This document shows positions 466 through 64,000 of a stretch of DNA of 64,000 nucleotides, piece by piece. The stretch spans positions 156,302,001 to 156,366,000 of the forward strand of contig OZ320313.1 of the NCBI GenBank assembly GCA_976226885.1. Reading direction: 5' to 3'. Position numbers and translations under genes: made by a program. This DNA is from Iphione sp. A-MEVVRFRX5 (lineage: Eukaryota). Below the pieces are notes generated by a model. It did not search any database, was not told the origin of the DNA, and saw nothing but the letters and a program-made list of their open reading frames with translations. Each line of letters starts with the position of its first letter. Within the stretch, counting starts at the first letter, position 1.

Positions 466-3400
466 GTAAGTCTTATGGTCCAGATCATGTAGTAGAAATA
501 AATGTGCAGTTCACTCTATATATCGCTTCTTAGTCCCTTGTCTCTACCTGCCTCCTAATATTTCACTGTCTCCATCTATATTTCCATCGCTATTTTTCTA
601 TCGTTTTCTCTCTAGTTGTCTGTCCGTCTCTTTGACTATCAAAGTCTTTTTTCATCATTTTTATCATCTGCCATGTCACTGCCCACTAAGTCGCTTAGTA
701 CAAGTACCAGGGGATAATATAACGTAATGTTTTTGTAAAATTGCACATTGATATGCTTGTCGATGATAGGATTATTATAGAATTGACTTCCCCTACCTGA
801 GCAGGTGAGAAGAGCAGCTCGCGAGTAACGGTGATGGCGAACGACTCGCCTCACGGTGTCGTGGCCTGGGAGCGTAGCAGCTACATTACCACCGAGCCCG
901 AGGGCACAGACACCACCACCTTCCTGCATATCACTCGATCACAAGGGACCCTGGGCACTATTCGTGTTGCCTACATGTAAAGAGACTCTTCTTGATCAGC
1001 TTCTTTTCCTTACACACTTCCTCAACATGTTGTATTCTTATGTCAGTGTAATTATATCAGTATTATTAAAAGAAACATTGTATTTATGCTGTACAATCAA
1101 TTCGAATCGAGGAGAAAATAGTGTTGTTGAAACAAAATATATATCTGGTTCAAACTTTGTAACTAACAAGAATAATAAGTGTTCTACATACATATTTAAA
1201 TAAATATACGTATAAAACTGGCCAGTCTTTCCGATTTTATACAATACTACATATAAACATTCCGGAATACATATGTATAGTATTGTATGAAATTAGGATA
1301 CACAAGTACAGGATTTTAGCGGCCAGACGACTTATACTAACAAGGTCAACTGACCACCAAGTAACCTAAGATAAACAAGAGGCGAATATTACAAATAGGC
1401 CCCTCAATGTCACCTTTTTCCCTGGCAGTACTTCACAAGACGTGACCCTGCCTACCAAACAGCAGGCCGTGTCGGGGCGTGACTACTTGCCAGTCCAGTC
1501 GTCCGTCGACCTGCAAGACGGTGTCACCCGTGTGCCCATAGAAATCACCATCCTGTCGGTAAGGCTTTCATGGCCCACCACCTTGTCTCATTATGATCCT
1601 GAGTAATGTTTATATATGTACGTGTATGTATGTATGTATGTATCTATGTATGTGTGTATAAACATGTATACAAATATTATGTTGATGGGTGTGGCATGCA
1701 TCGCCCATCAAAATACATATAAAAGTAAGTCTCCCCAGAATACGGTCACATCGGGTCACATTATGGCCATGTGCATCGCATTTTGTGAGGAACTTGGCCT
1801 TTCATACACCCAACAGAGGAACGAGGCTGGCAGATACTGACACTAATACAGGTTGGCTATAGTCATTCATGACTTGGTTCAACTTTTACTCCATAAATCG
1901 TTGGCAGAGGGAAGGGTCATACCATTCCCTTCCAAGTTCCAAGACTTCATAGCGGCGAGAATTCACACCGACCAGAACCCATATAACATCAAATTTATAC
2001 GAGAAACATTGTGCTTTTTTATTATTTGTTATAATAGGACTCTGACCCCGAGGTGGCAGAAAGCCTTCTCATCAACATCACCGGTGTTCAGCTGATAGAT
2101 GGCGCCACGGTAGGCGCCGGTGCCAGCGTGCGGCGACCCGGAAACGTCGCATCTTTGACGATCGCTGAAAATGATGATGCGCGAGGCATTATTCAGTTTG
2201 ATGTCGTCAGAGTAAGTAGTCTCTTTAGGTCTGGAGTGTCACATTTATGTATGCACGGACACACCAGGCCATGATTCAATTCCATTTTGCTTGAGCGCTT
2301 TTTCTTTATATGATTTTGATGTAACCTTTGTAATTTGATTTGTATGCGTACAACTTCTCTCCTCAGAGCTAAGTACGTTTACATCTTCTTCGTACTGGAT
2401 TTGTGAAAGTAATCTGTCTCTTTCCCTCAGTATGACCATACTAATGGGCATTCCATTTGTACATGTACCTACGATCAAATCCCTTTCCACAAATCTAACC
2501 AGAAAACGAATGAACGTGTCAGTGTATGGTGCTATTTTCTCCTCTCTCTTTTTATCTAAGAACCTGGAAGGCCGAGTGGATACCTACGAGGGTGTCGGAT
2601 CCCTCAGACTGAAGCTCATCCGGACTGTTGGTTTCTATGGTGATGTAGAGGTGGCGTGGCAGGCTTCGCCACGAGAGGCCTCCACCGAGCAGTTTTCCCC
2701 GTCGGGCGGTACTGTTACCTTTGCCGAAGGAGAGGACGAGACCTTCATCGAGATCGCAATAACTGATGACACCATCGCGGAGGAATTGCAGGTAGCTTTA
2801 GGCAACCGTGTGGTTCTAATAGCAACTGCCCTTTCCAACGACAGGACAAGAACCCTCCTATTTTACAAACCTGAAAGTACAACCGATGCATTAGGGTTAC
2901 AACCCTAAATGAAAAATAACAGATGAGTTAAAAACTAGCAAAAAGTGCGAAAAATACAACATATAGAAAATTCCTCCTATGTTAATTTTCACTTTCAGAC
3001 CTTTGATGTTCAACTGATCCGGGTGACCTCTGGTGGCGCGACACTGGGTGCTGACAACTCGGTCAGGATCGGTATTATCCGCAATGACTCTCCGAACGGT
3101 ATCTTCTCCTTCGTGCAAACAAGGGTAGGACTCTAGTGGATCCTTTAAATCTTAGTTCGGGCCTAGCACAGGGTTACTGAGAACAGATTAAAAACTGCCG
3201 CATCACTTTGATTTAGAAACATTACTGAAGTCAATTTTGTCAATGAACAACAGTGCGGGTTTATCTCGTCTAGGATACTCTACTTTAGAGAATGAGTATA
3301 TTTTATTGGCACTGATACCTTTGTAGCGGACAGTGAGCGAGTCACGAACGCCCGACGACGCAGACGGCCTTGTGAAGTTTGACGTGCAGCGCGTAGGGAC

Positions 3401-6400
3401 GGAAGGCGACGTCAATCTGGAGTGGCGCCTCTCAGCGGACGCCGTCGACGACTTTGAGCCCCCTCTGACGGGCAATCTCCTTTTCACATCGGTATGCCGC
3501 CTACGGGCCGATTTTCCTTTGATATTGAGACTTTGGGACTCGTATCTCGGTTTATATTGAAACACATGATCTTCGAAAGGTGTTACCTACTACATGTCAT
3601 ATGGACCTCCCTCCCCGCGATTGCTTCCTTGTATGGTTAAAGCCAGGTGTGACCAGCTAGCCCATACTGTGTGTACAATTTACATCTATATATTATATAT
3701 GTATATATTATATATTATGTTATATGTATATATTCCTCTGCCCGCACACGGGATGAATAAAATTTCGCAGGCGTTATTTTCTTGTAAACCATGTTTCTTG
3801 CCTGAGTCACTACGATGCACACCGTACATTTTGTATGTAGGGGGAGGCCTTCAAGGATATTTCACTACGTACGCGAGTTGACAGTATTCTCGAGGGAGAA
3901 GAGGAGTTCACTCTGTCCCTCGTCTCAGCCGACAACAACGGTGATATTTCGCCGACGAAAGGTGACGCCACTGTCGTCATCCTTGCCGACGCCGGCGCCG
4001 GTGGACGCATAGCAGTAGCAGAGCGGGTTAGCATTTATAAGGGAAAACTAAAAATACCTTGGTCAATCACGAAGTTGAACCTTTGCACCTGACTTCAATT
4101 ATAATTTGACTAAAGTTACATAGGAGGTGAATTTTAAAGGTTTGCTGCTGAAAATGCAATATTGTGTATGCACAATGCTTAGAATTTTCACTTCTACGTA
4201 GATGTTGATTGTAAAGGACTCAGAGCAAGATACATTTCCCAGGCGTTAAATTCTTTCATGTCTAAAGTTTTTCTCCTGTTGGAAGTACATGCCTGTAGTT
4301 TTCCCACACCAAGTGGCAATTATCAGTCAATTAGGCCACAACTTCGCGTTTTACTTCACACAACCGACTCAGTTGCCCTGCCTTTGCATTTGCAGTTGTG
4401 TTTAATCGATCATTTCCGTTACAAAAGCCGGTGCATCTCCTCGCCCTGCTCAGTAACGCTAAGCTTTACATTATGTATCTTCCAGTCTCAATTCCTCATG
4501 GTGGGTGAGCCAAGTGTAACTTACGATGGGCGCTTGGAGGTGGCGCTCGAGAGACGGGTGGCATCCTACGGCGAGGTGCGCGCCACCTGGCAGATAATTC
4601 GGCGTGATAACGATGCCTTTGTCAAGCACCAGGACTCGGTCGTTTTCGCCGACGGTCAAAGAGAGGCTATAGTTATCTTACAGGTAGCGCAAACGAAACC
4701 TTACCACATTTAGATATTACCAATAGGGTATTGCGAATACGAATCTAATCTTAACCGTATACACATATATGACAATTACCTGCTATAATTACGGAAATCT
4801 TTAATGCTTAACGTAGAACGCATGCAGTTTAGTCCATAAATATTGAGGCTTCATTGATTCTGACATGAATATGTAGGGACCATTATGGGTCGCACATACA
4901 TGTTTATTTTATCATGTACAATGTACTTGGTTTGCAAAGTCGCAAGCGAATCATAAACGCCGTTTTTTTCCCGGTGGATCTTTAAAATTTCGGATCTTCC
5001 TGTAGACCAAGGACGACAACACTGCCGAACGTCGACAGACCTATGTCTTTGAGATTACATCAGCCACTGGGGGCGCCACCGTCGACCCGACGGCACGCAC
5101 CGCTGACATCGTCCTCGTGGCGAGCGATTTCCCTCATGGCTTGTTCGAGTTCGCCGCGCCGCAGGAAACAACCATATCTGAAGATTCCATACAGGTAGGG
5201 AGGCGCTACCACCCGACTTAAAGTGCGAGATAACGCAAGAAATAGTGTGGCAACTTCTTTCTTGCGATTCCACTAATCATACTTCCCTCCTCGTACATAT
5301 CACACTCAAGCTTATCTCGACACACTTTTATACATAATCTGTCCCTTTTTCATTTTCCCCACTTTTTTGCTAAAGAATCATAAATATAGCGCCGACTCAG
5401 GTGCTCTTTCTATAAACCATCATGTGTCCCTGCAGGTGACCGTGCCCGTGGAGAGGAACTTCGGCAGTCAGGGTCTTGTACGGGTCGAGTACACGACCTC
5501 GCCGGGAACCGCCGTCTCGGAAGAGACACTCACCCCCGACTTCGGGTCAAGTCGAGGCTGGCTTGTCTTCGGCAACAACCAGCGCCGCCAAACGGTCGTC
5601 GTGGACATTGTCAATGACGCACGCGCGGAGGGACCCGAGTATTTCTTCATTAATCTGACTCAAGTCGAGCTCCAACAATCCATGTAAGGGACACTCAATC
5701 GAATGTCATGCTTAATTTTGTGTAGTTATGTAAGTACATGTGTGAATGTATGTATGTATGTATGTGTATGTATGGGCATTATATATTTATGCATGTTTGT
5801 ATACATGTATAATAGGAAGAGAGAGACAATGATGGAAAGGGTCTCTTATGAAAAAAAAAAAAAACTTCAAACTTGAATACTTTTACAAATACATGTACAT
5901 GAATCTGTGCATTTTTCATTATTGTAGCTACATGTAGTAGGAACACAAATAGATTCATTCCTTTTTCAAACAAGCCAAAATGACGCTCATGCCGGTTTTC
6001 TTTCCAGTGCCAATAACTACACGATTATAGGTGGATTACAACTTGATATGGCACCGGCAATAGGAGAACTCGACTACAAGATGATCATCATCGAAAAGAA
6101 CGACAACGCTGAGGGCATTGTGGAATTCACCGAGGAGGCCCTCTCCTTCGTTGGTATGTCGAATTCCCCGTTTACAAGAAACGAATTGTATCTTTATTTG
6201 TGGATATTTAGTTAAGTAACTTTCAATGGACATAAAATGTAAGAAAACTCTTATCATAACAGCACAAATAATGAAGACGACGCAATTACATTTCCTGTTT
6301 GTAAAGTTCTTTCTGACAATAAGCAAGAAACATCAGTGATGAACTATATGCTGACATTTTAAAATATGCTATATGCCAAAGACTATCTGCCGAAGTAATC

Positions 6401-9400
6401 ACACTAATTTTGATCCCATTTAATTCTCAGACCAAGTGGACAATATTAGTAACTTTAAAATTTGATAAATTATTCATTTAATAATACTACATTATGGACT
6501 ACTCAACTATAACCTGAACACTACCCTTAACTCTGTTTATCCTTGACAACTGTTGCTAGGCGTGAAACTGATGAGTCAAAGTGATCAACATGTTCACTGT
6601 CGTTTGGCCTGAGCAAGCCTTACTGTAAAGGCGAAACATTGCTGTAGACCATTGTATCATATCAAGTCATTAAAGTCCCAAGAACACAGCACTTTACTTG
6701 GTTGAGTTGTTTCCTTCCTAGATAGTCTAAAGAGTGGATAGGTTCAGCAAACTTTCCTGACAGAGCCCAGTGGCGAGTTTCTTCCATAAAAAAAGATACG
6801 AGCGATAGACTTGTCCTCCGCCATCTTGTGGGAAATTGTCCATGGTACTTATTTTTATGGTCAGGTTTCAACAAGTTGACGCGAGATGAGTGTAAAACGG
6901 ATACATGTTTAAATTGTGTACATTCCTTCCAGCTTGAAGAACTAATGAAAAGCGCTGATTTGAAACAATTTTACTTGCTCTAGTGGCCGAAGAGAGTGGC
7001 ATGGCTCGGGTGCCCATAATCCGTGGTCCAGGAACATTCGGTGAAGTGCTCATTAAGTACACCACCCTGAACGTGAGCGCCTCACTTGGGCTCGACTACC
7101 TGCTCACAGTCAGAGAACTACTCCTCCCGTCGGGTGTTTCAAGGGCCACCATAAATGTCACCATCATTGATGATCAACTGAGGGAGTTTGGGGAGCAATT
7201 TGAGCTTACCCTGACCGAGGTCACAGGTCGGTAGCATACACTTTCTTTTTCGGGCTTACAACTCGAGTGTGTACTAGTGTAGATTATTCATCTTAATATC
7301 AAGCAGTTACCGAAATAATACGTGAGTAGTGTATGATTATCAGTCCACTCTATGAAAATCATCCCACTGGAACAATGCATAAGGATACATGGTAATAATT
7401 ATCATTCTACCCCGTTATCCAGCTTTGTATCTTATCATCTAAATATTTCTGGTAATGAAACTGCCGTACGTACACAGAATCAACCTGTGGCAATGGGCGG
7501 CCTTTCTTAGTGTCATTGGCTATGGATATCCCGGCTCAGTAGATATATGCTTCACTTAGCGTAGGTGATGTGCTCCTTTATTCCAAACTATCGTAAGGAA
7601 CTTCATTATCAGAGTTATGCCATCCAAACATTAATTTTGGTGGTTTTAGCTTGGTTCACTGACGTATCATGTGTTTACGCAACAATGGCAATGGTTAACA
7701 TCAATATCAAAAGTTAGTTGTTTCAAAACATGTGCATGTACATGTATACAGAAACGGTATCATGCCACAAAGTCTGTGTAGAAAAGTCATTTCACTGTAA
7801 AGAGGATTCATTCCTAGAGGCTTTGTTTACAGGTAAATTCCGAGCATCTAGGCACTGTCTAGTCTTCTGGCAGGCCTACAGACATTTATCCAAGCTTAAT
7901 TCTCTGTATTCTCTGCCACGAGACTCTAAAATACACAAAGACCTTCAAAACCGAATCTACAGGCAGGCTTCAAAATGCGCGTCATAAACCCTCATTTGGC
8001 AGAAAGATTGACCCTGAAACCGTGAAATCCTACTTCTTATCAGATCGCGCAGAATCTCATCAATTAAGTGTCCAGACGTGCCTGGATGATAATTCTACAT
8101 CATATCTTACGGTGGTTCCTTACTGACACACATCCCACATGTCTCCTTTGCCGAAATCCACGAGCTACCGGTTCCTTTCTTTTAATCTTCTAACACTGTC
8201 AGATGGTAGCGCCACCTGGAAAGTGGTAAAGTGCACTACGTGTAGATGTTTCACGTTCCCCGTTTTCATATTGACGGATCACTTTTCAAGGGATATCTTT
8301 GCGAGATTTCTCAGCAAAAAGGGGAATCAAATAAACTCGACAGCAGAGAGAACCATGCGTTATAAATTCACCCTCGGGTATTATATTAAAATCACACATA
8401 TCCGGTATTGTCTGTACACCTATATATAAGTGCATTGAAACGAGGCGATCAAGACGTGCCGGATTACCCATTATGTTGAAATTTCGAACTGTTATGAACT
8501 GGAGGGATAAAATTATTGCTTTGCTCACCTCTAGAATGCACGATCTTTCCGAAAGGTGACCTACAAAGTAATCAGAGATAAAATGGTTTCATTGTTGGAG
8601 TTACTTCCAATGGTTGTCCCAAAAACCTGGGATAGATTCTTCTCAAGTAGCTTTGGAAATGATACTAAAGTTACTCTAAGACTGGGTTTCCATGAAGGTG
8701 TGTCGGCATGGAGTGTGTAAGCATATTTGAAGTGTGTTTTTAATAGACAAATATACACATGTTTCCGTGTCAGCATAGGGATGTGTTGTGTGTTTTCAGG
8801 GGCGTATTGGTGTGTTTGGAAATGGACAAACGTGAACGTGGCACATGTTTTCGGCATGTTATTTTGAATATGTTTGGCAGTAGATGTGTAACACAAATGC
8901 ACAGCGAAGACATGTGTCATGACATGTATCCATGTATAGTAGTTATCAGATTAACTTTTTCATGGGGAAAAACACACACACAAACAGAGCAACACACCTA
9001 CATACATCCATGGAAACCCAGCCTAAAGACTTGGCTTTTTAAAAACATGTTTTGTAAAGAGAAGGTAATCTGTCATATATCGTATGCATTTTTAATATGG
9101 TGATATGTCTCAGTGTCTATTATGGATATGGCAGAAAGCATCAGGCACTAATCCGAAGGTGTAACATGAACATCAATATATTACAATATGACAAATGGGC
9201 CTATATATGTATATATAGATAGAGGCAGCTAGCTACTTAGGCCTATGAACATGTTATACTAATAGCTAGATTCTTGTCAGTGTATTTCGGTAACCTAGAC
9301 ACGGATGAATATATTGATACCTTTTGTTCAGAATGAAGTTAGGCGTGGCTAGTTGGCTCATCTGCACACTCTATAACGCTCAGAATGAAGTGAAATTGCT

Positions 9401-12400
9401 TCCTATGACTGTGTCTTTGGTGGCTATGACAGGTGAGCCCCCTGCTAATCAATATTCACCTGAAAGCGGGGATCTCATATCGTTTACCTCATCTGTCTGA
9501 CAGAACCAGATGTTTATTGAAGCAGCCCAATACTAACAGTCACTGACAAATACACGAAGAATTGCCTCTTTTCCCGTTACTTCGTCATTTTTTATTCTCT
9601 GCCGTAGGGGTAACAATCCGTAACATTGAAAAATTGCCAAAACTATGTCGTTCAGAATATTCAGTATTATGCTAGAAATATGCAAAATGGAGTGTCCGAA
9701 TCCTACTACTTTAAGCGAACATATATTCAGAGAGAGGAAATTAGTGGTTTTACTAGACAAAGATATTCCAAAATTAATAAGTATATTTTATGTGCACATT
9801 TTACTGACTGTCTTTTTTGTAATCCACTAACTTCAGAGAAAGAAACATAGATGCCACAATGTGTTATTACTTTGAGCTACTAAGTGCTGGTATTACTCAC
9901 TGCACAACCACAAAATGGTGGGATGGTCTGCTTCTGCCTGGCGACTCAACTCATCTGTAAAGTAAACATACAGCATATTATCGTATTTAGCTATTCTTCA
10001 CCAGATAGATCATTATCAGAGTTTATTACTTCATCCACATGTCATCACTTTCTACCAGGAAGTCAGCTTCCATGGACAGAATTCCACCCGGAACATAGCG
10101 TCGTTGACTTGTATTTTCAAAATAAGGAAGTAAAAACGAGGTTGCCATGCCTGCACAAAGCCGGCAGCCACGGTTCGATGGCAACCACCGTGGTGCGGCC
10201 AAAGCATCGATTAATCTGGGTGCACCCTTGCGAACGCCTCCTATTGATCTCCTCTGGGTTAATCTAAATTCAGCCAGACCTACCGAAATAGTAATAGGTC
10301 ATCATTTTGCATCGAGTTCGAACTTTTCCTATGGACGACAGGCGGTTTATTGTAGGTCTTATATCCACGTACCTGTTGAATAAACCATGTCTTCAATGGT
10401 GTTTACACTTAATGGTTATATTTAACGTATTGACTGGTCTGTGTTAAAAAAAGATTATCACAAGAGGAAACGTTTGTAGGAAGAAGAAACGTGATGTGGT
10501 GTACATGCTTTATTTTCACGTAGTATGTGCATTTATACATGTATGTATACACGCAGGTGTACATGTATACACGCATTGCAAATCAACGTCGCAGCCAGAT
10601 GGAATTTCATTGTCCCGAAAACAATTCGGACCATATTTTGTCTAGTATCATGTACGCATTTTTAAATCATGTCCCTGCAGATACTGCTTATAATTGCTTA
10701 ATATTTTCAAGAAATAGAAACATAGTAGGCAGATATATGTGAACAGATGGAGAAAGATGAGGGTTTAGGAGCAAGAGAGGACTGAGGGAATCAAAATAGA
10801 TAAACATTGAAAGAAAACAGATATTCATGTACATGTACCTATATGCATGCAGAAAAGACGGGCTCGTCATATCCCTGCATCTTGACGGATTTTACCACTC
10901 GATGAGTTCACTGGACCTGAAACTTTGGAGGGTGCCAGCAAGCTGATTCTCGAGTATTTACTATTGATCCCATAACATAGTCCAGTTGTCTCATACTCAA
11001 AAATTCCCTTGACGCGTGTGAAATATGTGGAGCAATACAAGTCATTACTTATGCATGCGTCTCTCAGCGTGGACAATTTCTGACTAGACAACTGCGTTGT
11101 TTGTGTTGAACAACTTGAAGCATTATATTTATCGTGCTGGAAAATCGACCGACTTGAATTCCTGTTGTTAATTACAATTGTCGGCCATCGTTACCGACTT
11201 AGACTGACAATTTAAGTGGCCATGATCATTCCACGCAGCAGCTAGAGGATAGATACAGTTCTTATTAAGTTTGGTCAATTGTTGTTCTTCATTTGGCTAT
11301 GGCCGGTCGGGGAATCGATATCACTCTGAAGTGAATCTCACAACTGATCACAATAGGAAGCGACACTCCTATTCAAACCCTGAGCCCCCCCCCCTTTAAT
11401 TATAGGACATCGCACATCACTGTACATTCATAAACATATGTAAACAAACACGAGGTCTGTACGCATTCGGTGGAGCGTGACGTGACTCACACGCACCGCC
11501 CCAATCCATCTCAAACTTCGTTAACGCTCCCACTACTCACACACGCCTCATCCACCCCGCAAGGCGGACCACGTGGCCTAGTTTAAACTTTAAGGCGGCA
11601 AGTGTCCCGTTCGTTTTTGGCGAGGCTGGGGGTGGGGTGGGGCGAGGTCTGCCCGGGCAGGTACCGCAATGGGCAGCTCGGCCGGCCTGTAGTTTGCAAT
11701 AGTTTTAATGGCACTGGGCGGATTATACCTGGCAGTGCTGAGCTCCGTTCCAGCCAGAACACGGAGGCGGCTGAACTAGGTCAGATCTTTCAGCACGCAC
11801 ACGTACAGCGGCCAGGTGGGAATACCTTACCTCAGCGGCCACCGACAACACCAGACAACAACATCAATAACACAAGGAGGATGGCGGCAGCTGCTCAAGG
11901 AAAGCGGCATCCTCCAGGGAGTCATCCTGGCTGCCTCCAGTGGTTTCAGAGGTGCTTTTACATAACCCTCCTGCTGGGGTTAGTATACCCGAGGGGAGCC
12001 GGATCGCAGACACAAGGTAAACTGCCTGTCACTGTAAACAAAAGCACCTATGAGGCTGTGTGTAATACTCTTGGTGGTAAAATTTAATCACAACTTGGGG
12101 ACCTAGCCAACTCACCACGATTCGCAAACTGGTGGGTGGGGTTCTATTCATACTTCCTGCTAAGAGCGATTGCATAACATTCAGTAAATCAACAAATACA
12201 TAATATACTACACATATTGGTATTGCAAAAAAAAGAGAGTTGTTCACCGATATACGTAGGCCATACACTTCGGAAAGAGAGAGAGAGACGGGGGGGAGGA
12301 GGAGGGACATAGAGATATGGAAAAAACAGAAACATATTAATGTTGCAAGGAAAATGTTCTGTTTGTTTTTATTTGTAGAAATAACAATATACTTTGATAT

Positions 12401-34700: not shown

Positions 34701-37700
34701 TGTGAATAGATACAGTCCTGCTGTTTCCTTTTGCACCCGAAATCCAGTGTTGAAACGTGCATACATGGAAATTAAAAAGAAATAAAAATCGGTTTATTTA
34801 TTAACAGATCAGTTGGTGAATTAGAAAAGGGGGTTGGCTAGTTATGGGAACAAGTTACGTTTAGAACCCTAAATAGACTAAACGAGGTTTTGTCTACATT
34901 CCAGTCTGCTAGCGAGATGTGTGAAGTGAAAATAAGAAAAGAAATGACAAAAGTTCTAACCGCAAATAAATCCTGTGCATATTTAGACTGCCTGAGATAA
35001 AGGCTGCTTAGTGGAGAGCTGTTGGAATGTGATAGTAAAATGTGATATTCTACCTACGTATGAAATCCTCATGCCTCGCCAGCTGTTTCCTATAGTCACA
35101 TACTCATTTGGGAAAAAGTACGTTCGTTTACCTTTAACATCTGTGGTCATCCATAGGTAAATGCTAGTCATTAAGCCTCTGTCGCATGCACCTGCTAGAG
35201 AGCATACTTGCTCCAATAGCCTATATGGGAATTGATTCGAGTCAGGACCACGGGCTCGGATAGAATGGAGATGGAAGCACCCGTAATACGATAACCTCTA
35301 CTCTAGCAGAAGCCACTATTGATTAAGTTCTGTGGTGGCTTCATAAGGAGTGAGGTGTATAAATGGCAGGGGGGGCTCTACTAGGCTAGACAAAATGAGG
35401 AAGTCATTTCCACTACAGTGATGAAATACCACTGGTGCACTTTTAATGGGACGGGACTTAATGTGTCCTTTTGAGAGAAGTGCGCTAAGAACGTTTCGCT
35501 GTGATCGAACTTCGTGTCTAGTGGCCATTGAAATGCTCGCCTTTCTGTCTGAATTCTACAGATGTGTGTACTTTGATGAGGACATCCAGCAGTGGACGGA
35601 TCGAGGGTGTTCGGTGAACAATGACCTCAGCCTGGCTACGCAGAAATTTGTCCGTTGTTCATGCAAGCACATGTCCAGCTACGCCGTGTTGTCTGAGGTG
35701 CGCAACCCCGATCTGATCGGCTATCCGATCTGGTTCCAGCTCTCCTGCTTCTTTGTTGTGGTAAGGAACAGTTCACGTGATACTCCGTTTTTACCTCATT
35801 ACAAAAACATTGTGCATAAAAGAAGACCCGCCGTTACGTGCATGATGTAATGCCACGACTGTCTAAAGCCAGGATGCTAGTTAATAAGCTATAACTGTTT
35901 GCTTCGGGAAATGTTGCTGTTGATTTACATGATGATCATAGTACAGCCTCATGTTTGAGTATGTGCGTATCTAAGTGAGAGAGAGAGAGAGACAGACAGA
36001 TGGAGAGACAGAGGGAGGGAGAGAGAGAAACATCTAGATGACAAGGTTCCAATTGTATTATGAGATGGATTGACTGGTTTTGTGATTTCATGGAGTGCTT
36101 TAGAAAATCGATTTTTTATGAATTGATACTGTGCTCAATAAAATGATTTGATAAGATAAGCGTAAATTTAGTATATTAGACTAACGAGTTGAAGGTCAGG
36201 TCCATTTTAAGCATAATGGTATTGAGGTAAAGTTTCAGGATACGTTTAAACCATAGATAATACGGACAGATCTTATGCGGGCTGTTCCATGCAAGGAAAC
36301 ATATGTAGGTCGGGGCAAACTTCCCCAGTCTTCCTCGTTCTTAATTCTGAGGTAAGAATGCCTGAAGACCCTAATTCACTTAATGTCCTCCTCCATTGTG
36401 GGACGGCAATTGGGAGTTGGGTCGTGTCATCTCCATGGTTACTTGTAGTTAAAATGATCAGTCCTAATGACGGGCCACGACCTTGGTCTACAGACATTCA
36501 TAACTCGATTTCCGAACACTCCGTGTCCGAAAATTTGCAATATCTGAATGGATTTCCTTTGTGGAAAGTGGGTTCTAACTGTAGGGGTAGGATTCAATTA
36601 TCCCGATAGACTCAGTTTCTCTTGAAACAACGATCATTCAGACGTCAGGTCCGGACAGTATTGGCTAACAGTTGTGGCCGCTGAAGTGTTTACCTGTCCA
36701 ATTTTCCTACACAAGTTCCGTCTATATGAAATTACTCGTGTATGGATTTGTCTCAATCTGTAACCCTTTGTGAACGGGAATGCCGGATTTTTGGGGTCGA
36801 ATGTTGGTGAGACATGCGTATACATCCGGTTACGCAGCAGTGCCAATAAAACGTTTCTCCTTGAGAGAAATAACTACATGTAGTTGGATGGTGTGCACAC
36901 AATGCACAGGCATATGCTCATAATTGTGCTCACATTTGTTTTTGTCAATTGGTTCCAGTGGCAAATAGCCTTTTGCTGCATTGGCACAGTATTGGGGACT
37001 CGATAAACTTGTTAAAACTTAACTCATATTACATACACACGTCATGCTCTAACTCTGTCGTCTTAGACGAAACCCTTCCCTTGCCTCTTCTGGCAGTGTT
37101 CCCATGTGTTCCTCTCACTGCCTATATATAGAAATCGCCTCCTTCTGTTGCAGGGCTGCCTCGTCGTCGTCATACTCTCCCATCACTTCTGCGTACCTCA
37201 CGCCATGTTCGCTGCCAATCTTTTCATGCATTTCTGTTTTGCCCTGCTCGCCACTGAGGTACGTGATCAACTCTGAACTACCACAGGCAATGAAAGCCCG
37301 TGGGTCTGGCTCCTGCCTCCGTGGGTTATTACTCACGAAGTAAGGTTTTAATTGCACCCTGCTTGTTTCCATGGTATTTAAGCGAAGTAAAATGAATTCT
37401 TTATGATCAAATCCAAAACTGGTCCTTTATAACTATCCGAACACCACGCCACATCCAGGGCGCAAAGGCCATTTAATCAGACAAGACATCTTCATTAATA
37501 TTGATCAATGCGTTTTTTTGGATTGTTGATCTAGATGGTCTAGCTAAGGTTAGTGATTATATTTCAGCAAAAATATGTCCCACTGCGTACCGAATGAAAT
37601 AGATTCAGACATTTAAAGAAATTCACATATTAATTGGGACCCTGGAAACGCCATCGCTTTCCTTTCTACCAAGGGACGTGTCGCTTCTGTAGATAAGGAA

Positions 37701-46700: not shown

Positions 46701-49322
46701 TTTGTAGATCGCACATTAAGCCGATGCTAATCACTGCAATACAATCAAAGAATCAAAATAGCCTCATTCATGTTTGAATCCTTCTAATCAGTCTCCGGTT
46801 GGCTCTCCCGCTTGTATAAAGTGACAGATAATAATGATGATGAATGCATGTCTCTCCCTCAACATTCGCTAACTAAGAAGCACGAATCCAATTGCTGCTC
46901 CAGGGTTTGTATGCGCTGATTGTCTACTCCATCCTACGCAACCCATGCCGACCGTGCCTGAGGCCACAAAAGTCCACCACCTATGCTGTTAACTACGGAC
47001 CGAGCGAGATAGGCGAACCATTGCCCTTCCAGCCCGTTACCCTCCCATCGCTAGCCGGCAGCGTCAAAGGTTCGCGGGCTTCGTTGATCAACGATGTGAG
47101 TATCTCAGTCGACTCAGTGACGTTTTTTTTCCTAATTTGAAATGATGTGTACTCTCTTTCGGTATTATGACTGGGAAAACTATAAATCGATAGCATAATA
47201 CTCATAGAGCTGATACTGCTATCTTTAAAAAGACAAATGGTGGACAAATAAATCTGGCGTGTCCATGAGTGTGGTGCATGTACTTTGAATTGAGGGATAG
47301 ATTGTAAAATTTAACTAATTTTTTAACATGAAATGAGTACTTTAATCTTAAACACTATGGCTATTGCTAGAATATGACTAATCAGTTCAGTAAAACACAT
47401 TATGCTTGAATTTTCCATTGGTTCAGTCTGGTAATAGTACATTCGTTCAGCCTCTCCACACTTTGCTCAATACTTATATCAAGTCTTCACGTATTAGAAC
47501 AGTGAATGCAACCGCATCTAGACCTGAAATGTTCAATTTTAGTTATGGTGTAGAAGTTTTTTTCTTGCTGGTTAGAAAATAAATCACATTGCACTGCCAA
47601 ATCTCAAAGTGAACCGAAACCAACGTTTTAACTGGATCTAAAGAGGGCAAAGATCATAGAGAAATGGTAGATGGAGGCGGGGAATGGAATTGCAGGCATA
47701 GGTGGAGTTAATTACTTATAAAGACATCCGTAATTAAGGGTGTGAGATAGTAATATCACGTACCAATCATTAATTACGAATCTGGGTCTTTTAGGAAGCA
47801 TACATAACAAAAAAAAACTGAAAGATAATGAAGAGATCATTGACAATTCGGATTCAGATCGACAGGAATTTTCGGACTGAAAACAGGCTTAGCTCGAAGG
47901 CCTTGTTCCTTAATTCGCGCGGCAACACGATACAATTAATGGTCTTACCATGTCACAAGCAACGTAGCTGAGAAACTGGCACGGGGCATGCGACACTCAT
48001 TAGTAAGACACACGCAATTTTTGTCCATTTGTACGATATTTTTATCATGAGGGTGGCCATCTGTATTCATGGCTAACAGAGAGGCCTACATTTAGCGTGT
48101 GAGGTATTGTTTGGTTCGCTTAACGCAGTGATTCAATCATCTTTAATCATCCATTGTGAAACCGATCTCAAATAAAGAATGTATAAGTATGTCGATAGTT
48201 AAGAATGTCTCCTCATTCATCATAACTGGTTTGATACATTGAATTTTGTACCGATAGCCACTTCTATGAGACTCTTTTTATATACTACTGAGAGATGCTA
48301 CTGGTTGATATTCCGGTCTTATCCATCATGTAACGGGGGGGGGGTGTTTATAAGTGCTAACTAGGCAGTACATATAGACAATTCTTGAATTATGAAAATA
48401 ATGTCTCGGGTTTTGGTCAAACTACACATGGTCAGATAACCATCTAGTTCCCTACATTTTTTTGTATATAAATTGCCCTTCTTAGCCATCAGACGAAAAA
48501 TATAGTAAACTCAGCATTTATTTATGCCTTTTCAGTCATAACTACTTAAAATAGGTCAAATGCTAATAAAAATTCGTTATTGTTGTGATGAATCCCGACT
48601 CTCATATTCTTATTATTGTACAAAGAAAATCAGTCATGTGTGCGAGTAGCGGAGTTAGCCACGATGTGACTTTCAGGCACGCTCAGGAAATGTGTTGCGC
48701 TAGCATGACAGATTATTCATGCAAACTGCCCTCCAGGTCTAAGGTCATAGCTGCATTCCCGCCATTGTAAAAAGAAAGAATAGTGACTGTATTACTCACC
48801 CTCTACGCTCCTTATCAACAGTTTAGGAATTGATGTCTTTCATTATGCGAGTCACTTACATGGATGGTTTTGATGACATGTACGATTTTTTTCCATTCGC
48901 AATTCATTTTTGTATCAGTATACCTACGTAATTCAATAGGCAGGACAAATCACACTCGGTAACTGTTGCCTCTGTGCTTGCCTCTTCCCCAGGCCTGGGA
49001 GAAAGAGTCAATTCACGCCGGTATCAACAGCAGTGCGCTAAGAGTGAAGCGGTCGCCGGTCAACGGAAACGTCTTCGTCGTGCCCTCCCCGCCTTACGAC
49101 ACCAAGCCCACCACCCCTCGGGTGCCGTCCACCGTCACCGCCGGCCCGGTCACCGACCACGACTCACAGGACTTCGATGAGCTCATCTTCGCGCTCAAGA
49201 CGGGAGGTGGCTACACGCCGAGCGACTCGAGCCACCCGCCCCACCCCAACGAGCTGCCCGATCCGGGCGCCGAACCCAACTATGAGATGCGGCGCATCTC
49301 CATCGCAGACACGCATTTGTGA
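318..49322 (+). CDS. ADGRV1: Adhesion GPCR V1 (VLGR1/GPR98), 5'-partial; 47 coding exons in window (listed separately)
   Basis: All exons are flanked by AG/GT and the phases chain without a break (7680 nt incl. stop). Repeated Calx-beta motifs (ND.P.G.F.F; R..G..G.V.V.W; DD..PE.DE.F), a GPS, 7TM segments resembling vertebrate ADGRV1 ([38 protein letters not shown]) and C-terminal IADTHL. Confidence 0.97.
805..976 (+). CDS. ADGRV1: ADGRV1 exon w2
   Basis: [21 protein letters not shown]...[13 protein letters not shown]; phase 1-2. Confidence 0.93.
1429..1558 (+). CDS. ADGRV1: ADGRV1 exon w3
   Basis: [22 protein letters not shown]...IEITILS; phase 2-0. Confidence 0.92.
1612..1660. repeat. Imperfect (TATG)n microsatellite
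   Basis: Seen directly; a similar tract lies at 5744-5772. Confidence 0.85.
2038..2211 (+). CDS. ADGRV1: ADGRV1 exon w4
   Basis: [19 protein letters not shown]...[15 protein letters not shown]; phase 0-0. Confidence 0.93.
2561..2791 (+). CDS. ADGRV1: ADGRV1 exon w5
   Basis: [33 protein letters not shown]...DDTIAEELQ; phase 0-0. Confidence 0.92.
2999..3124 (+). CDS. ADGRV1: ADGRV1 exon w6
   Basis: [17 protein letters not shown]...[15 protein letters not shown]; phase 0-0. Confidence 0.93.
3327..3491 (+). CDS. ADGRV1: ADGRV1 exon w7
   Basis: [33 protein letters not shown]...LLFTS; phase 0-0. Confidence 0.9.
3841..4026 (+). CDS. ADGRV1: ADGRV1 exon w8
   Basis: [27 protein letters not shown]...[14 protein letters not shown]; phase 0-0. 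Confidence 0.92.
4486..4683 (+). CDS. ADGRV1: ADGRV1 exon w9
   Basis: SQFLMVGEP...[14 protein letters not shown]...AIVILQ; phase 0-0. Confidence 0.92.
5006..5194 (+). CDS. ADGRV1: ADGRV1 exon w10
   Basis: [17 protein letters not shown]...[11 protein letters not shown]...DSIQ; phase 0-0. Confidence 0.93.
5436..5683 (+). CDS. ADGRV1: ADGRV1 exon w11
   Basis: [19 protein letters not shown]...[15 protein letters not shown]; phase 0-2. Confidence 0.93.
6008..6153 (+). CDS. ADGRV1: ADGRV1 exon w12
   Basis: [19 protein letters not shown]...[11 protein letters not shown]; phase 2-1. Confidence 0.91.
6984..7226 (+). CDS. ADGRV1: ADGRV1 exon w13
   Basis: [21 protein letters not shown]...[19 protein letters not shown]; phase 1-1. 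Confidence 0.93.
8680..9023. mobile_element. PIF/Harbinger-type MITE (344 bp)
   Basis: 15-bp TIRs GACTGGGTTTCCATG / CATGGAAACCCAGCC (1 mismatch); TAA target duplication on both sides. Confidence 0.75.
11460..11880 (+). promoter_or_regulatory. Putative internal promoter/5'UTR of short ADGRV1 isoform
   Basis: GC- and CpG-rich block inside AT-rich intron. Contains TGACGTGA (~11480), CCGCCCCAAT (~11496), CCACGTGG (~11569) and GGGGTGGGGCG / GGGCGG boxes, and ends at the ATG exon. Confidence 0.55.
11881..12016 (+). CDS. ADGRV1: Putative alternative first coding exon of a short ADGRV1 isoform (signal peptide)
   Basis: ggaggATGG start; [45 protein letters not shown](G); 136 nt; donor CAAG|gtaaac in phase 1, matching the phase-1 acceptor of exon w14. 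Confidence 0.7.
12632..12807 (+). CDS. ADGRV1: ADGRV1 exon w14
   Basis: [26 protein letters not shown]...[10 protein letters not shown]; phase 1-0. Confidence 0.94.
12849..13180. repeat. (CTT)n microsatellite (about 13 units) followed by a polypyrimidine/(CTC,CTG) low-complexity tract
   Basis: Seen directly; explains the spurious ORFs at 12585-13283. Confidence 0.95.
13681..13959 (+). CDS. ADGRV1: ADGRV1 exon w15
   Basis: [20 protein letters not shown]...GNNFTLI; phase 0-0. Confidence 0.92.
14252..14395 (+). CDS. ADGRV1: ADGRV1 exon w16 (absent from ORF track)
   Basis: tttgtag|[26 protein letters not shown]...[10 protein letters not shown]|gtaagt; phase 0-0. Confidence 0.92.
15168..15394 (+). 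CDS. ADGRV1: ADGRV1 exon w17
   Basis: [22 protein letters not shown]...[14 protein letters not shown]; phase 0-2. Confidence 0.93.
15855..16014 (+). CDS. ADGRV1: ADGRV1 exon w18
   Basis: [11 protein letters not shown]...[19 protein letters not shown]; phase 2-0. Confidence 0.93.
17484..17646 (+). CDS. ADGRV1: ADGRV1 exon w19
   Basis: [29 protein letters not shown]; phase 0-1. Confidence 0.9.
18064..18177 (+). CDS. ADGRV1: ADGRV1 exon w20
   Basis: [28 protein letters not shown]...VDE; phase 1-1. Confidence 0.91.
18625..18806 (+). CDS. ADGRV1: ADGRV1 exon w21
   Basis: [21 protein letters not shown]...SFKVQ; phase 1-0. Confidence 0.91.
19407..20006. mobile_element. PIF/Harbinger-type non-autonomous element (600 bp) with internal tandem repeats
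   Basis: Perfect 13-bp TIRs GGGTCGGTTTCCT / AGGAAACCGACCC; TTA duplication at 19404-19406 and 20007-20009. Confidence 0.8.
19689..19861. repeat. About 2.8 copies of a 61-62 bp minisatellite
   Basis: Units start at 19689, 19751 and 19812; shared core GTGAAATTCAC...CACTATTCC.ATCAA. Confidence 0.9.
20099..20290 (+). CDS. ADGRV1: ADGRV1 exon w22
   Basis: [15 protein letters not shown]...[20 protein letters not shown]; phase 0-0. Confidence 0.9.
21173..21201. repeat. 13-bp tandem duplication
   Basis: GTCTACGTGGCTA x2. Confidence 0.9.
21251..21412 (+). CDS. ADGRV1: ADGRV1 exon w23
   Basis: [32 protein letters not shown]; phase 0-0. Confidence 0.93.
21698..21785 (+). CDS. ADGRV1: ADGRV1 exon w24
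   Basis: [20 protein letters not shown]; phase 0-1. Confidence 0.92.
22152..22310 (+). CDS. ADGRV1: ADGRV1 exon w25
   Basis: [26 protein letters not shown]...FTIVRT; phase 1-1. Confidence 0.93.
22727..22917 (+). CDS. ADGRV1: ADGRV1 exon w26
   Basis: [19 protein letters not shown]...[13 protein letters not shown]; phase 1-0. Confidence 0.93.
23201..23341 (+). CDS. ADGRV1: ADGRV1 exon w27
   Basis: [28 protein letters not shown]...DNGRR; phase 0-0. Confidence 0.92.
24296..24451 (+). CDS. ADGRV1: ADGRV1 exon w28
   Basis: [19 protein letters not shown]...[11 protein letters not shown]; phase 0-0. Confidence 0.92.
24756..24908 (+). CDS. ADGRV1: ADGRV1 exon w29
   Basis: [12 protein letters not shown]...[18 protein letters not shown]; phase 0-0. 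Confidence 0.92.
25241..25386 (+). CDS. ADGRV1: ADGRV1 exon w30
   Basis: [12 protein letters not shown]...[15 protein letters not shown]; phase 0-2. Confidence 0.93.
26171..26378 (+). CDS. ADGRV1: ADGRV1 exon w31 (absent from ORF track)
   Basis: [19 protein letters not shown]...[20 protein letters not shown]; phase 2-0. Confidence 0.9.
26421..26474. repeat. 27-bp tandem duplication
   Basis: TAGGCATTCTCCAACT(C/T)TGTAT(T/A)GCAT x2. Confidence 0.9.
26905..27008 (+). CDS. ADGRV1: ADGRV1 exon w32
   Basis: [34 protein letters not shown]; phase 0-2. Confidence 0.91.
27549..27656 (+). CDS. ADGRV1: ADGRV1 exon w33 (end of Calx-beta array)
   Basis: [22 protein letters not shown]; phase 2-2. Confidence 0.9.
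28430..28537 (+). CDS. ADGRV1: ADGRV1 exon w34 (helical GAIN-A-like region)
   Basis: [35 protein letters not shown]; phase 2-2. Confidence 0.87.
28720..28772. repeat. (GA)n/(GAAA)n microsatellite
   Basis: Seen directly. Confidence 0.95.
29158..29328 (+). CDS. ADGRV1: ADGRV1 exon w35
   Basis: [27 protein letters not shown]...TEFDCDQCC; phase 2-2. Confidence 0.9.
30815..30977 (+). CDS. ADGRV1: ADGRV1 exon w36
   Basis: [43 protein letters not shown]; phase 2-0. Confidence 0.9.
32283..32363 (+). CDS. ADGRV1: ADGRV1 exon w37
   Basis: [27 protein letters not shown]; phase 0-0. Confidence 0.9.
32939..33042 (+). CDS. ADGRV1: ADGRV1 exon w38
   Basis: [24 protein letters not shown]; phase 0-2. Confidence 0.92.
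35562..35760 (+). CDS. ADGRV1: ADGRV1 exon w39: GPS motif and start of TM1
   Basis: [16 protein letters not shown]...[12 protein letters not shown]...[10 protein letters not shown]; phase 2-0. Confidence 0.96.
35977..36030. repeat. (GA)n-rich microsatellite
   Basis: Seen directly. Confidence 0.9.
37154..37258 (+). CDS. ADGRV1: ADGRV1 exon w40 (TM1-TM2)
   Basis: [35 protein letters not shown]; phase 0-0. Confidence 0.93.
37830..37970 (+). CDS. ADGRV1: ADGRV1 exon w41 (TM2-TM3)
   Basis: [11 protein letters not shown]...[22 protein letters not shown]; phase 0-0. Confidence 0.95.
38432..38513 (+). CDS. ADGRV1: ADGRV1 exon w42 (ICL2-TM4)
   Basis: [27 protein letters not shown]; phase 0-1. Confidence 0.95.
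39118..39226. mobile_element. Tc1/mariner-type foldback MITE (109 bp)
   Basis: TA|CAG...CTG|TA ends; perfect 21-bp arms 39129-39149 / 39195-39215 and 10-bp arms 39151-39160 / 39176-39185. Confidence 0.8.
39950..40535 (+). mobile_element. Degenerate 3' fragment of a non-LTR retrotransposon
   Basis: C/T-rich coding-like relic. C-x2-(F)-x7-H-x4-C knuckle-like peptide [18 protein letters not shown] at 40343-40396; ends in an A9 run. Confidence 0.45.
40556..40670 (+). CDS. ADGRV1: ADGRV1 exon w43 (TM4-ECL2)
   Basis: [19 protein letters not shown]...[10 protein letters not shown]; phase 1-2. Confidence 0.93.
41196..41353 (+). CDS. ADGRV1: ADGRV1 exon w44 (TM5-ICL3)
   Basis: [50 protein letters not shown]; phase 2-1. 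Confidence 0.95.
42005..42190 (+). mobile_element. LINE (CR1/L2-like) ORF2 relic, region just before the RT core
   Basis: Translates [35 protein letters not shown], resembling F...IT..EV...L..L...KA.G.D.I....LK; a stop follows. Confidence 0.6.
42600..42777. mobile_element. MITE with CAGTCAAACC TIRs (178 bp)
   Basis: 23-bp TIRs 42600-42622 / 42755-42777 with 2 mismatches; TA duplication not intact. Confidence 0.7.
44354..44475 (+). CDS. ADGRV1: ADGRV1 exon w45 (TM6-TM7)
   Basis: [41 protein letters not shown]; phase 1-0. Confidence 0.95.
46904..47095 (+). CDS. ADGRV1: ADGRV1 exon w46 (TM7 end, cytoplasmic tail)
   Basis: [18 protein letters not shown]...[13 protein letters not shown]; phase 0-0. 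Confidence 0.93.
48993..49322 (+). CDS. ADGRV1: ADGRV1 last coding exon w47 with PDZ-binding motif
   Basis: AWEKES...[14 protein letters not shown]...[12 protein letters not shown]; TGA at 49320-49322. Confidence 0.95.
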   Translation, partial: AWEKESIHAGINSSALRVKRSPVNGNVFVVPSPPYDTKPTTPRVPSTVTAGPVTDHDSQDFDELIFALKTGGGYTPSDSSHPPHPNELPDPGAEPNYEMRRISIADTHL

Positions 49323-60430: not shown

Positions 60431-61017
60431 CTAAATCTCATCGATAAGATTTGCTGGCTTGGTCATCGGCTTGAAGACCAAGATACTAATGGAGGATAGG
60501 AAAGAGCCGATAAGGAAGAGCCAGAACAGAAACCGGTCCATGATATGCGCCACCAGGCGCCATTCGTTAATGATGTCCTGGAATTCATCCTCGCCGTCGT
60601 GCTTGGACACGAGGATCTTCAGGTGCCGCGATATCTTATCGTAGTTCACGTTCCTGTCTCTGTTGTTCTCCCCAAGTCTGCCGCCGCCTCCTCCACCCCC
60701 GCCGTCGTTCAAGCCGAACTGGTGGAGCTGCGACTGGTTCAGCCGGCCATTGCAATTATTCGTCTCCTTCAGCTCGAGATTGTCTATGAAGGACGTCAGA
60801 CACACGTCATCCTTTTTGGAGTTCGGCTCACGATAGCTGTAGTACCCTTGTAGATGAGAGGTCATGCAGATTGCGCGCGCAATCACGCCAATGACTACTT
60901 TCCGGATCCACACCGGGACGGCTTTGGTGTTGGGGCCGACGTGGTGCAGCTGTAGCACAAACACCGTCAGCACTATGGAAAGTGACGTCATCGCCATGGT
61001 CACCGTCAGGTATATAC
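60431..61017 (-). CDS. Nicotinic acetylcholine receptor alpha9/alpha10-like, last exon: M3, intracellular loop, M4
   Basis: ctcgtag|GIYLTVTMAMTSLSIVLTVFVLQLHH...EWRLVAHIMDRFLFWLFL...NLIDEI*; the phase-1 acceptor matches the previous exon. Confidence 0.95.
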
Positions 61018-63614: not shown

Positions 63615-64000
63615 CTGTTGATCAGTTGGCCACCAGGAAAAGGCGAACCGCGCAGAACGGACCAAAAACACAAGAAGTAAAACACATAAGAAATCAGAAC
63701 TCAACACAGATTGATGACAGGAATCCACGCAAGAGGCATCAGACCTGAAGCAATTTGGGATAAGCGATTTTGAAAGACAATGCATTAGAATTCCCTCTGG
63801 CAATGTAAGAATACTGGACATTTTGTAACAAGAAGATTGCTTCATAATCCAGGAAGTACAGCCCGGTTTATCAGACATCCTTGTAATTATTCTACTTAAT
63901 ATTTTGAAATCGCCGACTTAATAAGCAATAAAACTACTTTCTGAAAGTCGGGTCTTGTTACTTTGCTGTATTCTGTTGCATCATCCAAAACACATTGTAT

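What the first reader, a model, noticed from the sequence alone, without database searches (positions are those of the whole stretch)
11881..12016. Hidden signal-peptide first exon inside intron 13 predicts an internally initiated short ADGRV1 receptor
Seen: an ATG in good context (ggaggATGG) opens 45 codons. They give a basic n-region (GKRH...QR), a hydrophobic core ([12 protein letters not shown]) and a small-residue c-region (PRGAGS|QTQ). The exon ends at a strong donor (AAG|gtaaac) in phase 1, the phase the next ADGRV1 exon (12632) needs. It has no Calx-beta similarity, so it is not a cassette of the long form. Joining it to exons w14-w47 gives 5460 nt, about 1819 aa: a new leader, roughly 9 Calx-beta repeats, GAIN, 7TM and the PDZ tail. 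Established (from memory): human ADGRV1 also makes a short isoform, VLGR1a (about 1967 aa), from an intronic promoter. Inference: a long/short two-promoter design exists in an invertebrate, conserved or convergent, here with its own signal peptide.
Basis: partly seen in the sequence, partly recalled or inferred. Interest (0 to 1): 0.85.

Follow-up and report, generated by a model that had tools for sequence, protein, structure and literature searches.

The report
Candidate internal start exon in ADGRV1
Inside a large intron of an invertebrate ADGRV1 (Usher-syndrome receptor) gene lies a GC-rich island ending in a small exon-like reading frame that could start a short receptor with its own secretion signal, but no RNA data or conservation in relatives could be found, so it remains a plausible, unproven candidate.

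Summary
The sequence features are all present as described. An ATG at 11881 (A at -3, G at +4) opens 45 codons with a basic start, a 12-13-residue hydrophobic core and small residues at -3/-1. The donor AAG|GTAAAC follows 12016 in phase 1, the phase the Calx-beta exon at 12632 needs. The host gene is an ADGRV1 orthologue (Calx-beta exons, GPS, 7TM, C-terminal DTHL). Exon 13 (6984-7226) joins exon 14 directly in every orthologue, so the ORF is not a long-form cassette. It ends a 750-bp GC-rich island, the only such non-exonic block in the gene. Nulls give about 0.1-0.7 chance look-alikes per gene in the right phase, under 0.1 with the start context, and 5e-4 inside a random island of this composition. 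Against: no RNA run is listed and the leader has no homologue. None of six relatives has it (four have an intron 13 of about 90-205 bp). Codon usage is not exon-like, and the signal would be unusually long (about 41-42 aa). Human VLGR1a starts about 210 residues further upstream and has no leader of its own, so any likeness is convergent. I put a real alternative first exon at about 0.4. The interpretation cannot be settled here.

The parts
6984..7226 (+). ADGRV1 exon 13 (Calx-beta half-domain). It ends in phase 1 at CAG|GTCGGT and is the long-form partner of exon 14.
   Evidence: Pfam Calx-beta E=3.5e-12. Collinear with Branchiostoma 4434-4515 and shark 4362-4443. Boundaries read.
11301..11880 (+). 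GC-rich island: putative internal promoter plus 5' UTR. It holds CCAAT (about 11501), an E-box CACGTG (about 11571), GT/GC boxes (about 11630-11647) and an Inr-like TCAGATC (11782-11788). There is no ATG in the last 173 nt.
   Evidence: GC 0.51-0.66 against 0.27-0.45 in the rest of the intron. It is the only non-exonic, non-low-complexity block with GC >= 0.54 in the gene span. ATG-free run measured. Motifs were read; they are short and unproven.
11881..12016 (+). Candidate alternative first coding exon: ATG, 45 codons plus 1 base, signal-peptide-like, phase 1 donor AAG|GTAAAC.
   Evidence: It is the only one of 1767 intronic ATGs on both strands to pass all criteria.
12017..12631 (+). Intron that would be removed between the candidate leader and exon 14 (GT...AG, pyrimidine-rich 3' end, GC 0.27-0.44).
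12632..12807 (+). ADGRV1 exon 14. It needs phase 1. It begins with the last strand of the Calx-beta domain started in exon 13, then opens the next repeat.
   Evidence: homologous exon in many animals at 50-64 % identity..
35560..35691 (+). GPS motif of the GAIN domain of the same gene.
   Evidence: Pfam GPS E=6.4e-9.
49308..49319 (+). C-terminal DTHL (PDZ-binding type) followed by the stop codon.
   Evidence: Open frame ending ...ISIADTHL. Aligns to the C-termini of orthologues.

Best explanation
The GC-rich island at about 11300-11880 is an internal promoter in intron 13 of an ADGRV1 orthologue. Transcripts would start roughly at 11710-11870. Translation would begin at the first ATG (11881), and the 136-nt coding part of this first exon would be spliced from 12016 to the ordinary acceptor of exon 14 (12632). 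The product would be a receptor of about 1820 residues. It would have a long, cleavable signal peptide (cleavage predicted around residues 40-42), a roughly 20-residue orphan end of a Calx-beta domain, the remaining Calx-beta repeats, GAIN/GPS, 7TM and the DTHL tail.

Shown: the sequence signals, their phase compatibility and their rarity under null models. Inferred: transcription, splicing, translation, and cleavage and targeting. If real, the exon is lineage-specific and only analogous to human VLGR1a, not homologous.
For: - All signals line up: A at -3 and G at +4; n/h/c layout; a donor on a par with the gene's own donors; the right phase.
- Real-sequence null: of 1767 intronic ATGs on both strands of the gene span, 54 have a usable donor and only this one also passes the signal-peptide criteria.
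- Markov nulls: 0.11-0.15 phase-compatible hits per 39 kb at strict thresholds and 0.7 at relaxed ones; under 0.01 and 0.09 respectively when the start context is added.
- In random 800-nt islands of the local composition the rate is 5e-4.
- The ORF ends exactly where a 750-bp GC-rich island ends. That island is the only non-exonic one in the gene.
- The 173 nt upstream are ATG-free (2.8 % of intron ATG gaps are that long).
- Intron 13 (5.4 kb) is much larger than its neighbours.
- Nothing else explains the island: no repeat, tRNA, Rfam, Pfam or atlas match.
- Precedent: human ADGRV1a starts in intron 64 (PMC13729602, PMC12047242).
Against: - No RNA run is listed for this DNA, so there is no junction or TSS evidence.
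- No protein in 5.8 billion shares even three 5-mers with the leader.
- Six relatives (45-60 % identical) lack any similar exon. Four of them have an intron 13 of only about 90-205 bp.
- The codon-usage score of the leader is -3.3, against +21 +/- 11 for this gene's exons and -15 +/- 10 for intronic ORFs. The proposed frame scores worst of the three.
- The hydrophobic core starts at residue 25-27, giving a signal of about 41-42 residues. That is rare among eukaryotic signal peptides (my knowledge), while 10-18 % of random passing ORFs have so late a core.
- Thresholds in the nulls were set after seeing the candidate.
- SignalP could not be run.
Confidence: 0.4

Rival explanations
1. The ORF is a chance ORF. 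The GC-rich island is intronic DNA with some other role or none (an enhancer, a decayed insertion, a compositional patch). The ATG, hydrophobic stretch and GT are a coincidence, and only the long form (exon 13 to exon 14) is made.
For: - At relaxed thresholds 0.7-1.6 phase-compatible look-alikes are expected per gene, and 2-5 % of random 45-codon ATG ORFs pass the crude signal-peptide test.
- There is no frame-specific coding signal.
- There is no conservation in six relatives and no homologue.
- The n-region is atypically long.
- The same first-stage reader proposed the same kind of exon in other genes of this genome, so selection for this pattern is at work.
Against: - With the start context the expected number falls to 0.09 or less per gene. 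Inside a random island of this composition it is 5e-4.
- The island is unique in the gene and ends at the donor.
- The upstream 173 nt are ATG-free.
Confidence: 0.4
2. The island is transcribed but the exon is not the start of a short receptor. It could be a non-coding or antisense RNA, or a poison cassette exon entered through the AG at 11792-11793. After exon 13 that cassette would be read in a frame that stops at 11868-11870.
For: - A possible acceptor tctttcag|CACG lies at 11793/11794.
- The frame reached from the phase-1 end of exon 13 has a stop just before 11871.
- The promoter-like motifs say nothing about the kind of transcript.
Against: - The tract before that AG is not pyrimidine-rich.
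- There is no Rfam match.
- There are no RNA data either way.
- This reading leaves the intact Kozak-ATG, signal-like ORF and in-phase donor as a coincidence.
Confidence: 0.12
3. The locus is really two genes. An upstream secreted Calx-beta/EPTP protein would end at or after exon 13, and a separate receptor gene would begin at 11881.
For: - NCBI models split the nemertean orthologues into two adjacent genes.
- The candidate supplies the signal peptide that a separate downstream gene would need.
Against: - The nemertean split lies about 900-960 residues upstream of the exon-14 equivalent, not here.
- Exon 13 ends mid-domain in phase 1 with a donor and no stop, and its Calx-beta domain is completed by exon 14.
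- The exon 13/14 junction is spliced in transcript-derived fragments of other animals.
Confidence: 0.05

Closest known systems
Human ADGRV1a / VLGR1a (UniProt Q8WXG9-2, 1967 aa)
   Same: It is a short membrane-bound isoform of the same receptor, made from a transcription start inside an intron of the long gene. It keeps the distal Calx-beta repeats, GAIN/GPS, 7TM and the PDZ-binding tail (PMC13729602, PMC12047242, PMC9146371).
   Different: VLGR1a starts in a 5' extension of exon 65 and equals residues 4340-6306 of the long form, so it has no leader exon or signal peptide of its own (PMC12047242, PMC9262510). By a shark proxy its start lies about 213 residues upstream of the exon-14 equivalent, near window exon 11 and three introns away (an estimate, as the human sequence was not aligned). 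The candidate here is a separate exon with a new signal-like peptide, and its expression is unproven.
Alpha/beta two-promoter genes such as the neurexins (beta-neurexin first exon inside an alpha-neurexin intron)
   Same: An internal promoter and a private first exon encode a new signal peptide that is spliced in phase onto shared downstream exons. This gives a short receptor beside a long one. From my knowledge, the beta-neurexin signal peptide is also unusually long.
   Different: This is a different gene family. The neurexin case is supported by cDNA, by knock-outs and by conservation across vertebrates. Nothing of that kind is available here.

Membership tests
ADGRV1 (VLGR1/GPR98) orthologue - host gene | Long series of Calx-beta repeats collinear with known ADGRV1 proteins | tested here: met
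   tblastn is collinear over 315-49319 with crinoid, amphioxus, shark, nemertean and scallop ADGRV1 at 41-48 % identity. Pfam Calx-beta on exon 13.
ADGRV1 (VLGR1/GPR98) orthologue - host gene | GAIN/GPS motif followed by a secretin-type 7TM domain | tested here: met
   Pfam GPS at 35560-35691. The 7TM exons at 37157-44469 align to the 7tm_2 part of orthologues.
ADGRV1 (VLGR1/GPR98) orthologue - host gene | C-terminal PDZ-binding motif (DTHL in vertebrates) | tested here: met
   The last open frame ends ...ISIADTHL before the stop.
Alternative-first-exon (internal promoter) isoform, VLGR1a type | Transcripts with 5' ends inside the intron | not testable with these tools
   No RNA run was listed for this stretch. 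Another agent on this genome also found no RNA data.
Alternative-first-exon (internal promoter) isoform, VLGR1a type | Splice junction from the private exon to the shared exon (12016 to 12632) | not testable with these tools
   No reads are available. No transcript-derived protein carries the leader.
Alternative-first-exon (internal promoter) isoform, VLGR1a type | Start in the intron orthologous to human intron 64 | tested here: not met
   VLGR1a equals residues 4340-6306 (PMC9262510). The shark orthologue has 1754 residues from the exon-14 equivalent to the end. The human start is therefore about 213 residues upstream, near window exon 11. This is an estimate through a proxy.
Alternative-first-exon (internal promoter) isoform, VLGR1a type | Conservation of the private exon in related species | tested here: not met
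   No similar exon or GC island is present in intron 13 of six relatives. Four of them have an intron of about 90-205 bp. No close relative (over 64 % identity in exon 14) is in the databases.
Sec-type cleavable signal peptide | Positively charged n-region, hydrophobic h-region of 7-15 residues, and a c-region with small residues at -3/-1 | tested here: met
   A heuristic gave net charge +3, an uncharged run of 13, a 9-residue hydropathy of 2.39 and A/G/S at -3/-1. 2-5 % of random ORFs pass the same test.
Sec-type cleavable signal peptide | Typical overall length (about 16-30 residues) and a positive call by a trained predictor | tested here: inconclusive
   The core starts at residue 25-27, so the signal would be about 41-42 residues. 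That is longer than usual. SignalP is not available here.

The most novel reading that the evidence does not exclude
A lineage-specific internal promoter in intron 13 of an invertebrate (probably lophotrochozoan) ADGRV1 gene drives a short receptor of about 1820 residues. A newly arisen first exon gives this receptor its own, unusually long signal peptide. That would be an independent (convergent) origin of the long/short ADGRV1 design known from vertebrates, solved differently from human VLGR1a, which has no leader of its own.
Probability: 0.4. Interest if true: 0.45.

Novelty: new member of a known kind. Interest (0 to 1): 0.3.

Why it matters
If real, the two-size design of ADGRV1 (a giant adhesion form and a short form keeping about a quarter of the ectodomain) would have arisen more than once. 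That would argue that the short form has a function of its own, which is still unclear for human VLGR1a. It would also be an example of a new signal-peptide exon born inside an intron. If it is a chance ORF, it is a useful caution: signal-peptide-like ORFs with in-phase donors occur at roughly 0.1-1 per large gene, and sequence alone cannot establish an isoform.

Tried and rejected
1. RNA evidence.
2. Homologues of the leader plus its read-through (68 aa). No candidate was found.
3. Close relatives through the exon-14 ORF. The best hit was 59-64 % identical, and an exact look-up found nothing. A dN/dS-type test was therefore impossible.
4. Other identities for the island. No tRNA, Rfam, Pfam, atlas match, window-internal repeat or inverted repeat was found. 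A transposon or ncRNA origin is unsupported but not excluded, because only the window could be searched.
5. Cassette exon of the long form. Rejected: orthologues join exons 13 and 14 without extra residues, and the frame from exon 13 through the AG at 11793 hits a stop.
6. Short annotated models as evidence for invertebrate short isoforms.
   - The Pecten maximus 1871-aa model starts at an internal Met of the exon-12 homologue with no UTR, and collinear unannotated Calx-beta exons lie just upstream. It is a truncated model.
   - The Branchiostoma belcheri 2209-aa model is the N-terminal part of the gene.
   - The nemertean 2.6-2.7-kaa models are halves of split annotations.
7. The bacterial promoter/terminator scan is irrelevant to a eukaryote.
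8. The contig of the nearest exon-14 homologue (P0012) gave no DNA.

Full report
**What is there**

The window carries, on the + strand from its start to 49319, the distal part of an ADGRV1 (VLGR1/GPR98) orthologue.
- Translated searches with crinoid, amphioxus, shark, nemertean and scallop ADGRV1 proteins give collinear matches over 315-49319 at 41-48 % identity.
- Exon 13 is a Pfam Calx-beta match.
- A GPS motif lies at 35560-35691.
- The 7TM exons follow, and the last exon ends in DTHL.
- Exon 13 is 6984-7226 and ends with one base of a codon (CAG|GTCGGT).
- Exon 14 starts at 12632 after ttttttag and needs exactly that one base.
- In every orthologue the two exons are contiguous, for example shark 4362-4443 and 4445-4499.
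- Transcript-derived fragments from other animals show the junction spliced.
- Intron 13 is 5.4 kb, far larger than the 0.3-0.8-kb introns around it.

**The observation**

At 11881 an ATG with A at -3 and G at +4 opens 45 codons.
- The peptide has a basic, acid-free start (K8, R9, R24).
- It has an uncharged hydrophobic run at residues 25-37, followed by P-R-G-A-G-S.
- The 136th base (12016) is followed by GTAAAC. This gives phase 1, as exon 14 requires.
- On a generic donor matrix the site scores 3.45 bits. The gene's own inferred donors mostly score 1-7, and exon 13's donor scores 2.0.
- The frame has no Pfam match. It cannot be a long-form cassette, because orthologues have nothing between exons 13 and 14.
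- Entered from exon 13 through the AG at 11792-11793, it would be read in a frame that stops at 11868-11870.

The description is therefore correct.

**Is it more than chance?**

I wrote a crude signal-peptide test: hydropathy of the best 9-mer, length of the uncharged run, net charge before it, and small residues at -3/-1. I combined it with the donor score.
- In the gene's own non-coding DNA (39 kb, both strands) there are 1767 ATGs. Of these, 54 have a donor of 3.0 bits or more at 75-400 nt inside their ORF. Only the candidate also passes the peptide test.
- Taken alone, the peptide test is passed by 2-5 % of random 45-codon ATG ORFs.
- Third-order Markov sequence modelled on the introns gives 0.11-0.15 phase-compatible hits per 39 kb at thresholds just under the observed values.
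- At relaxed thresholds it gives 0.7, and at very lax ones 1.6.
- Adding the start context gives under 0.01, 0.09 and 0.2 respectively.
- The thresholds were chosen after the fact, so the fair family-wise figure is somewhere between 0.05 and 0.5 per gene.

**The context adds weight**

The ORF closes a 750-bp block (11301-12050) of GC 0.51-0.66. Just past the donor, GC falls to 0.43 and then to 0.27-0.32.
- Within the 49-kb gene span, GC >= 0.54 was reached outside the ortholog-anchored exons only here, in the unanchored flank just 3' of exon 14 (12651-13050, which holds a CTT microsatellite) and in the block at 40.5-41 kb.
- In 20000 random 800-nt islands of the same second-order composition, only 5e-4 contained a phase-1 candidate.
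- The 173 nt before the ATG contain no ATG, and only 2.8 % of intronic ATG-to-ATG gaps are as long.
- The island carries short promoter-type words: CCAAT, CACGTG, GGGGTGGGG/GGGGCG and TCAGATC (read). These are weak evidence in GC-rich DNA.
- Nothing else accounts for the island. There is no repeat inside the window, no tRNA, no Rfam family, no Pfam domain and no atlas look-alike.

**What speaks against it**

- No RNA run holding this stretch is listed. Another agent working on this genome likewise found no RNA data. The decisive test (junction 12016-12632, 5' ends in the island) could not be run.
- No protein among 5.8 billion shares three 5-mers with the leader.
- The databases hold no close relative of this species. 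The best exon-14 match is 64 %, so selection on the ORF cannot be measured.
- I fetched six more distant relatives. All have the exon 13/14 boundary and none has a comparable exon, a similar sequence or a GC island in the intron.

| Relative | Intron 13 |
|---|---|
| Unnamed ENA contig L001 | about 100 bp |
| Unnamed ENA contig L002 | about 100 bp |
| Unnamed ENA contig L003 | 2.3 kb |
| Pecten maximus | 4.8 kb |
| Lineus longissimus | about 205 bp |
| Tubulanus polymorphus | about 93 bp |

- A codon-usage log-likelihood trained on this gene's exons gives -3.3 for the leader. Exon chunks score +21 +/- 11 and intronic ORFs score -15 +/- 10. The proposed frame is the worst of the three. Signal peptides differ in composition from Calx-beta domains, so this counts only as absence of support.
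- The hydrophobic core begins at residue 25-27, so the signal would be about 41-42 residues. From my knowledge that is rare for eukaryotic signal peptides, although long ones occur in some alternative-promoter isoforms.
- The mature protein would begin with the orphan last strand of the Calx-beta domain that exon 13 starts. This is harmless but not elegant.

**Comparison with the human short isoform**

- ADGRV1a/VLGR1a is 1967 aa and starts within intron 64 (PMC13729602).
- Long reads show a 5' extension of exon 65 running to exon 90 (PMC12047242).
- However, VLGR1a corresponds to residues 4340-6306 of the long form (PMC9262510). It therefore has no private leader or signal peptide.
- The shark orthologue has 1754 residues from the exon-14 equivalent to its end. 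The human start therefore lies roughly 213 residues further upstream, near window exon 11 and three introns away. This is an estimate through a proxy.
- If the candidate is real, it is an independent invention rather than a conserved feature.

**Apparent short invertebrate models do not help**

- The 1871-aa scallop model begins at an internal Met of the exon-12 homologue, with collinear unannotated Calx-beta exons just upstream.
- The 2209-aa Branchiostoma belcheri model is the N-terminal part of the gene.
- The nemertean models are halves of split annotations.

**Verdict**

I weighed four things:
- the rarity of the full signal set and its place at the end of a unique GC-rich, ATG-free island;
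- the lack of any expression or conservation evidence;
- the non-exon-like codon usage and the atypically long signal;
- the post hoc nature of the criteria.

| Reading | Probability |
|---|---|
| Real alternative first exon | about 0.4 |
| Chance ORF in an intronic GC patch | about 0.4 |
| Transcribed but not a short-receptor start | about 0.12 |
| Two separate genes | about 0.05 |

Even if true, it would be a new member of a known kind (an internal-promoter isoform of a large adhesion GPCR), of moderate interest to specialists.

Noticed in passing
window 60431-63685, - strand: This is a Cys-loop ligand-gated channel gene (nicotinic-receptor-like) downstream of ADGRV1 on the opposite strand. 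One exon ORF matches Pfam Neur_chan_LBD (8.6e-34) and Neur_chan_memb (4.8e-22).
   Followed up: partly
window 12535-12631: An ATG at 12535 is in frame with exon 14 through the 3' end of the intron (a 93-aa ORF). Formally this is a 5'-extended-exon start of the human VLGR1a type. The extension is not signal-peptide-like, and such pyrimidine-tract ORFs are common before exons.
   Followed up: partly
L004 (Pecten maximus LR736846.1) 1439-10102: The annotated 1871-aa scallop ADGRV1-like gene is 5'-truncated. At least ten collinear Calx-beta exons lie unannotated in the 10 kb upstream of its start. Its intron 13 is also large (4.8 kb), as in the window.
   Followed up: partly
L005 (Lineus longissimus) 1-2001 and L006 (Tubulanus polymorphus) 1-2001: In both nemerteans NCBI annotates ADGRV1 as two adjacent same-strand genes separated by only about 60-270 bp. 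The split is at the same place, after the EPTP region and about 900-960 residues before the exon-14 equivalent. It could be a shared annotation artefact or a real gene split.
   Followed up: no
window 12840-12890 and 40000-41000: A (CTT)n microsatellite lies directly after exon 14. A CT-rich low-complexity block of about 1 kb lies in a later intron.
   Followed up: no
window 6048-6060 (exon 12): The scallop and sea-cucumber gene models both start at a Met that aligns with the Met of 'DMAPAIG' in window exon 12. The shark has Gln there, so this is probably the first available Met for truncated models rather than a conserved start.
   Followed up: partly
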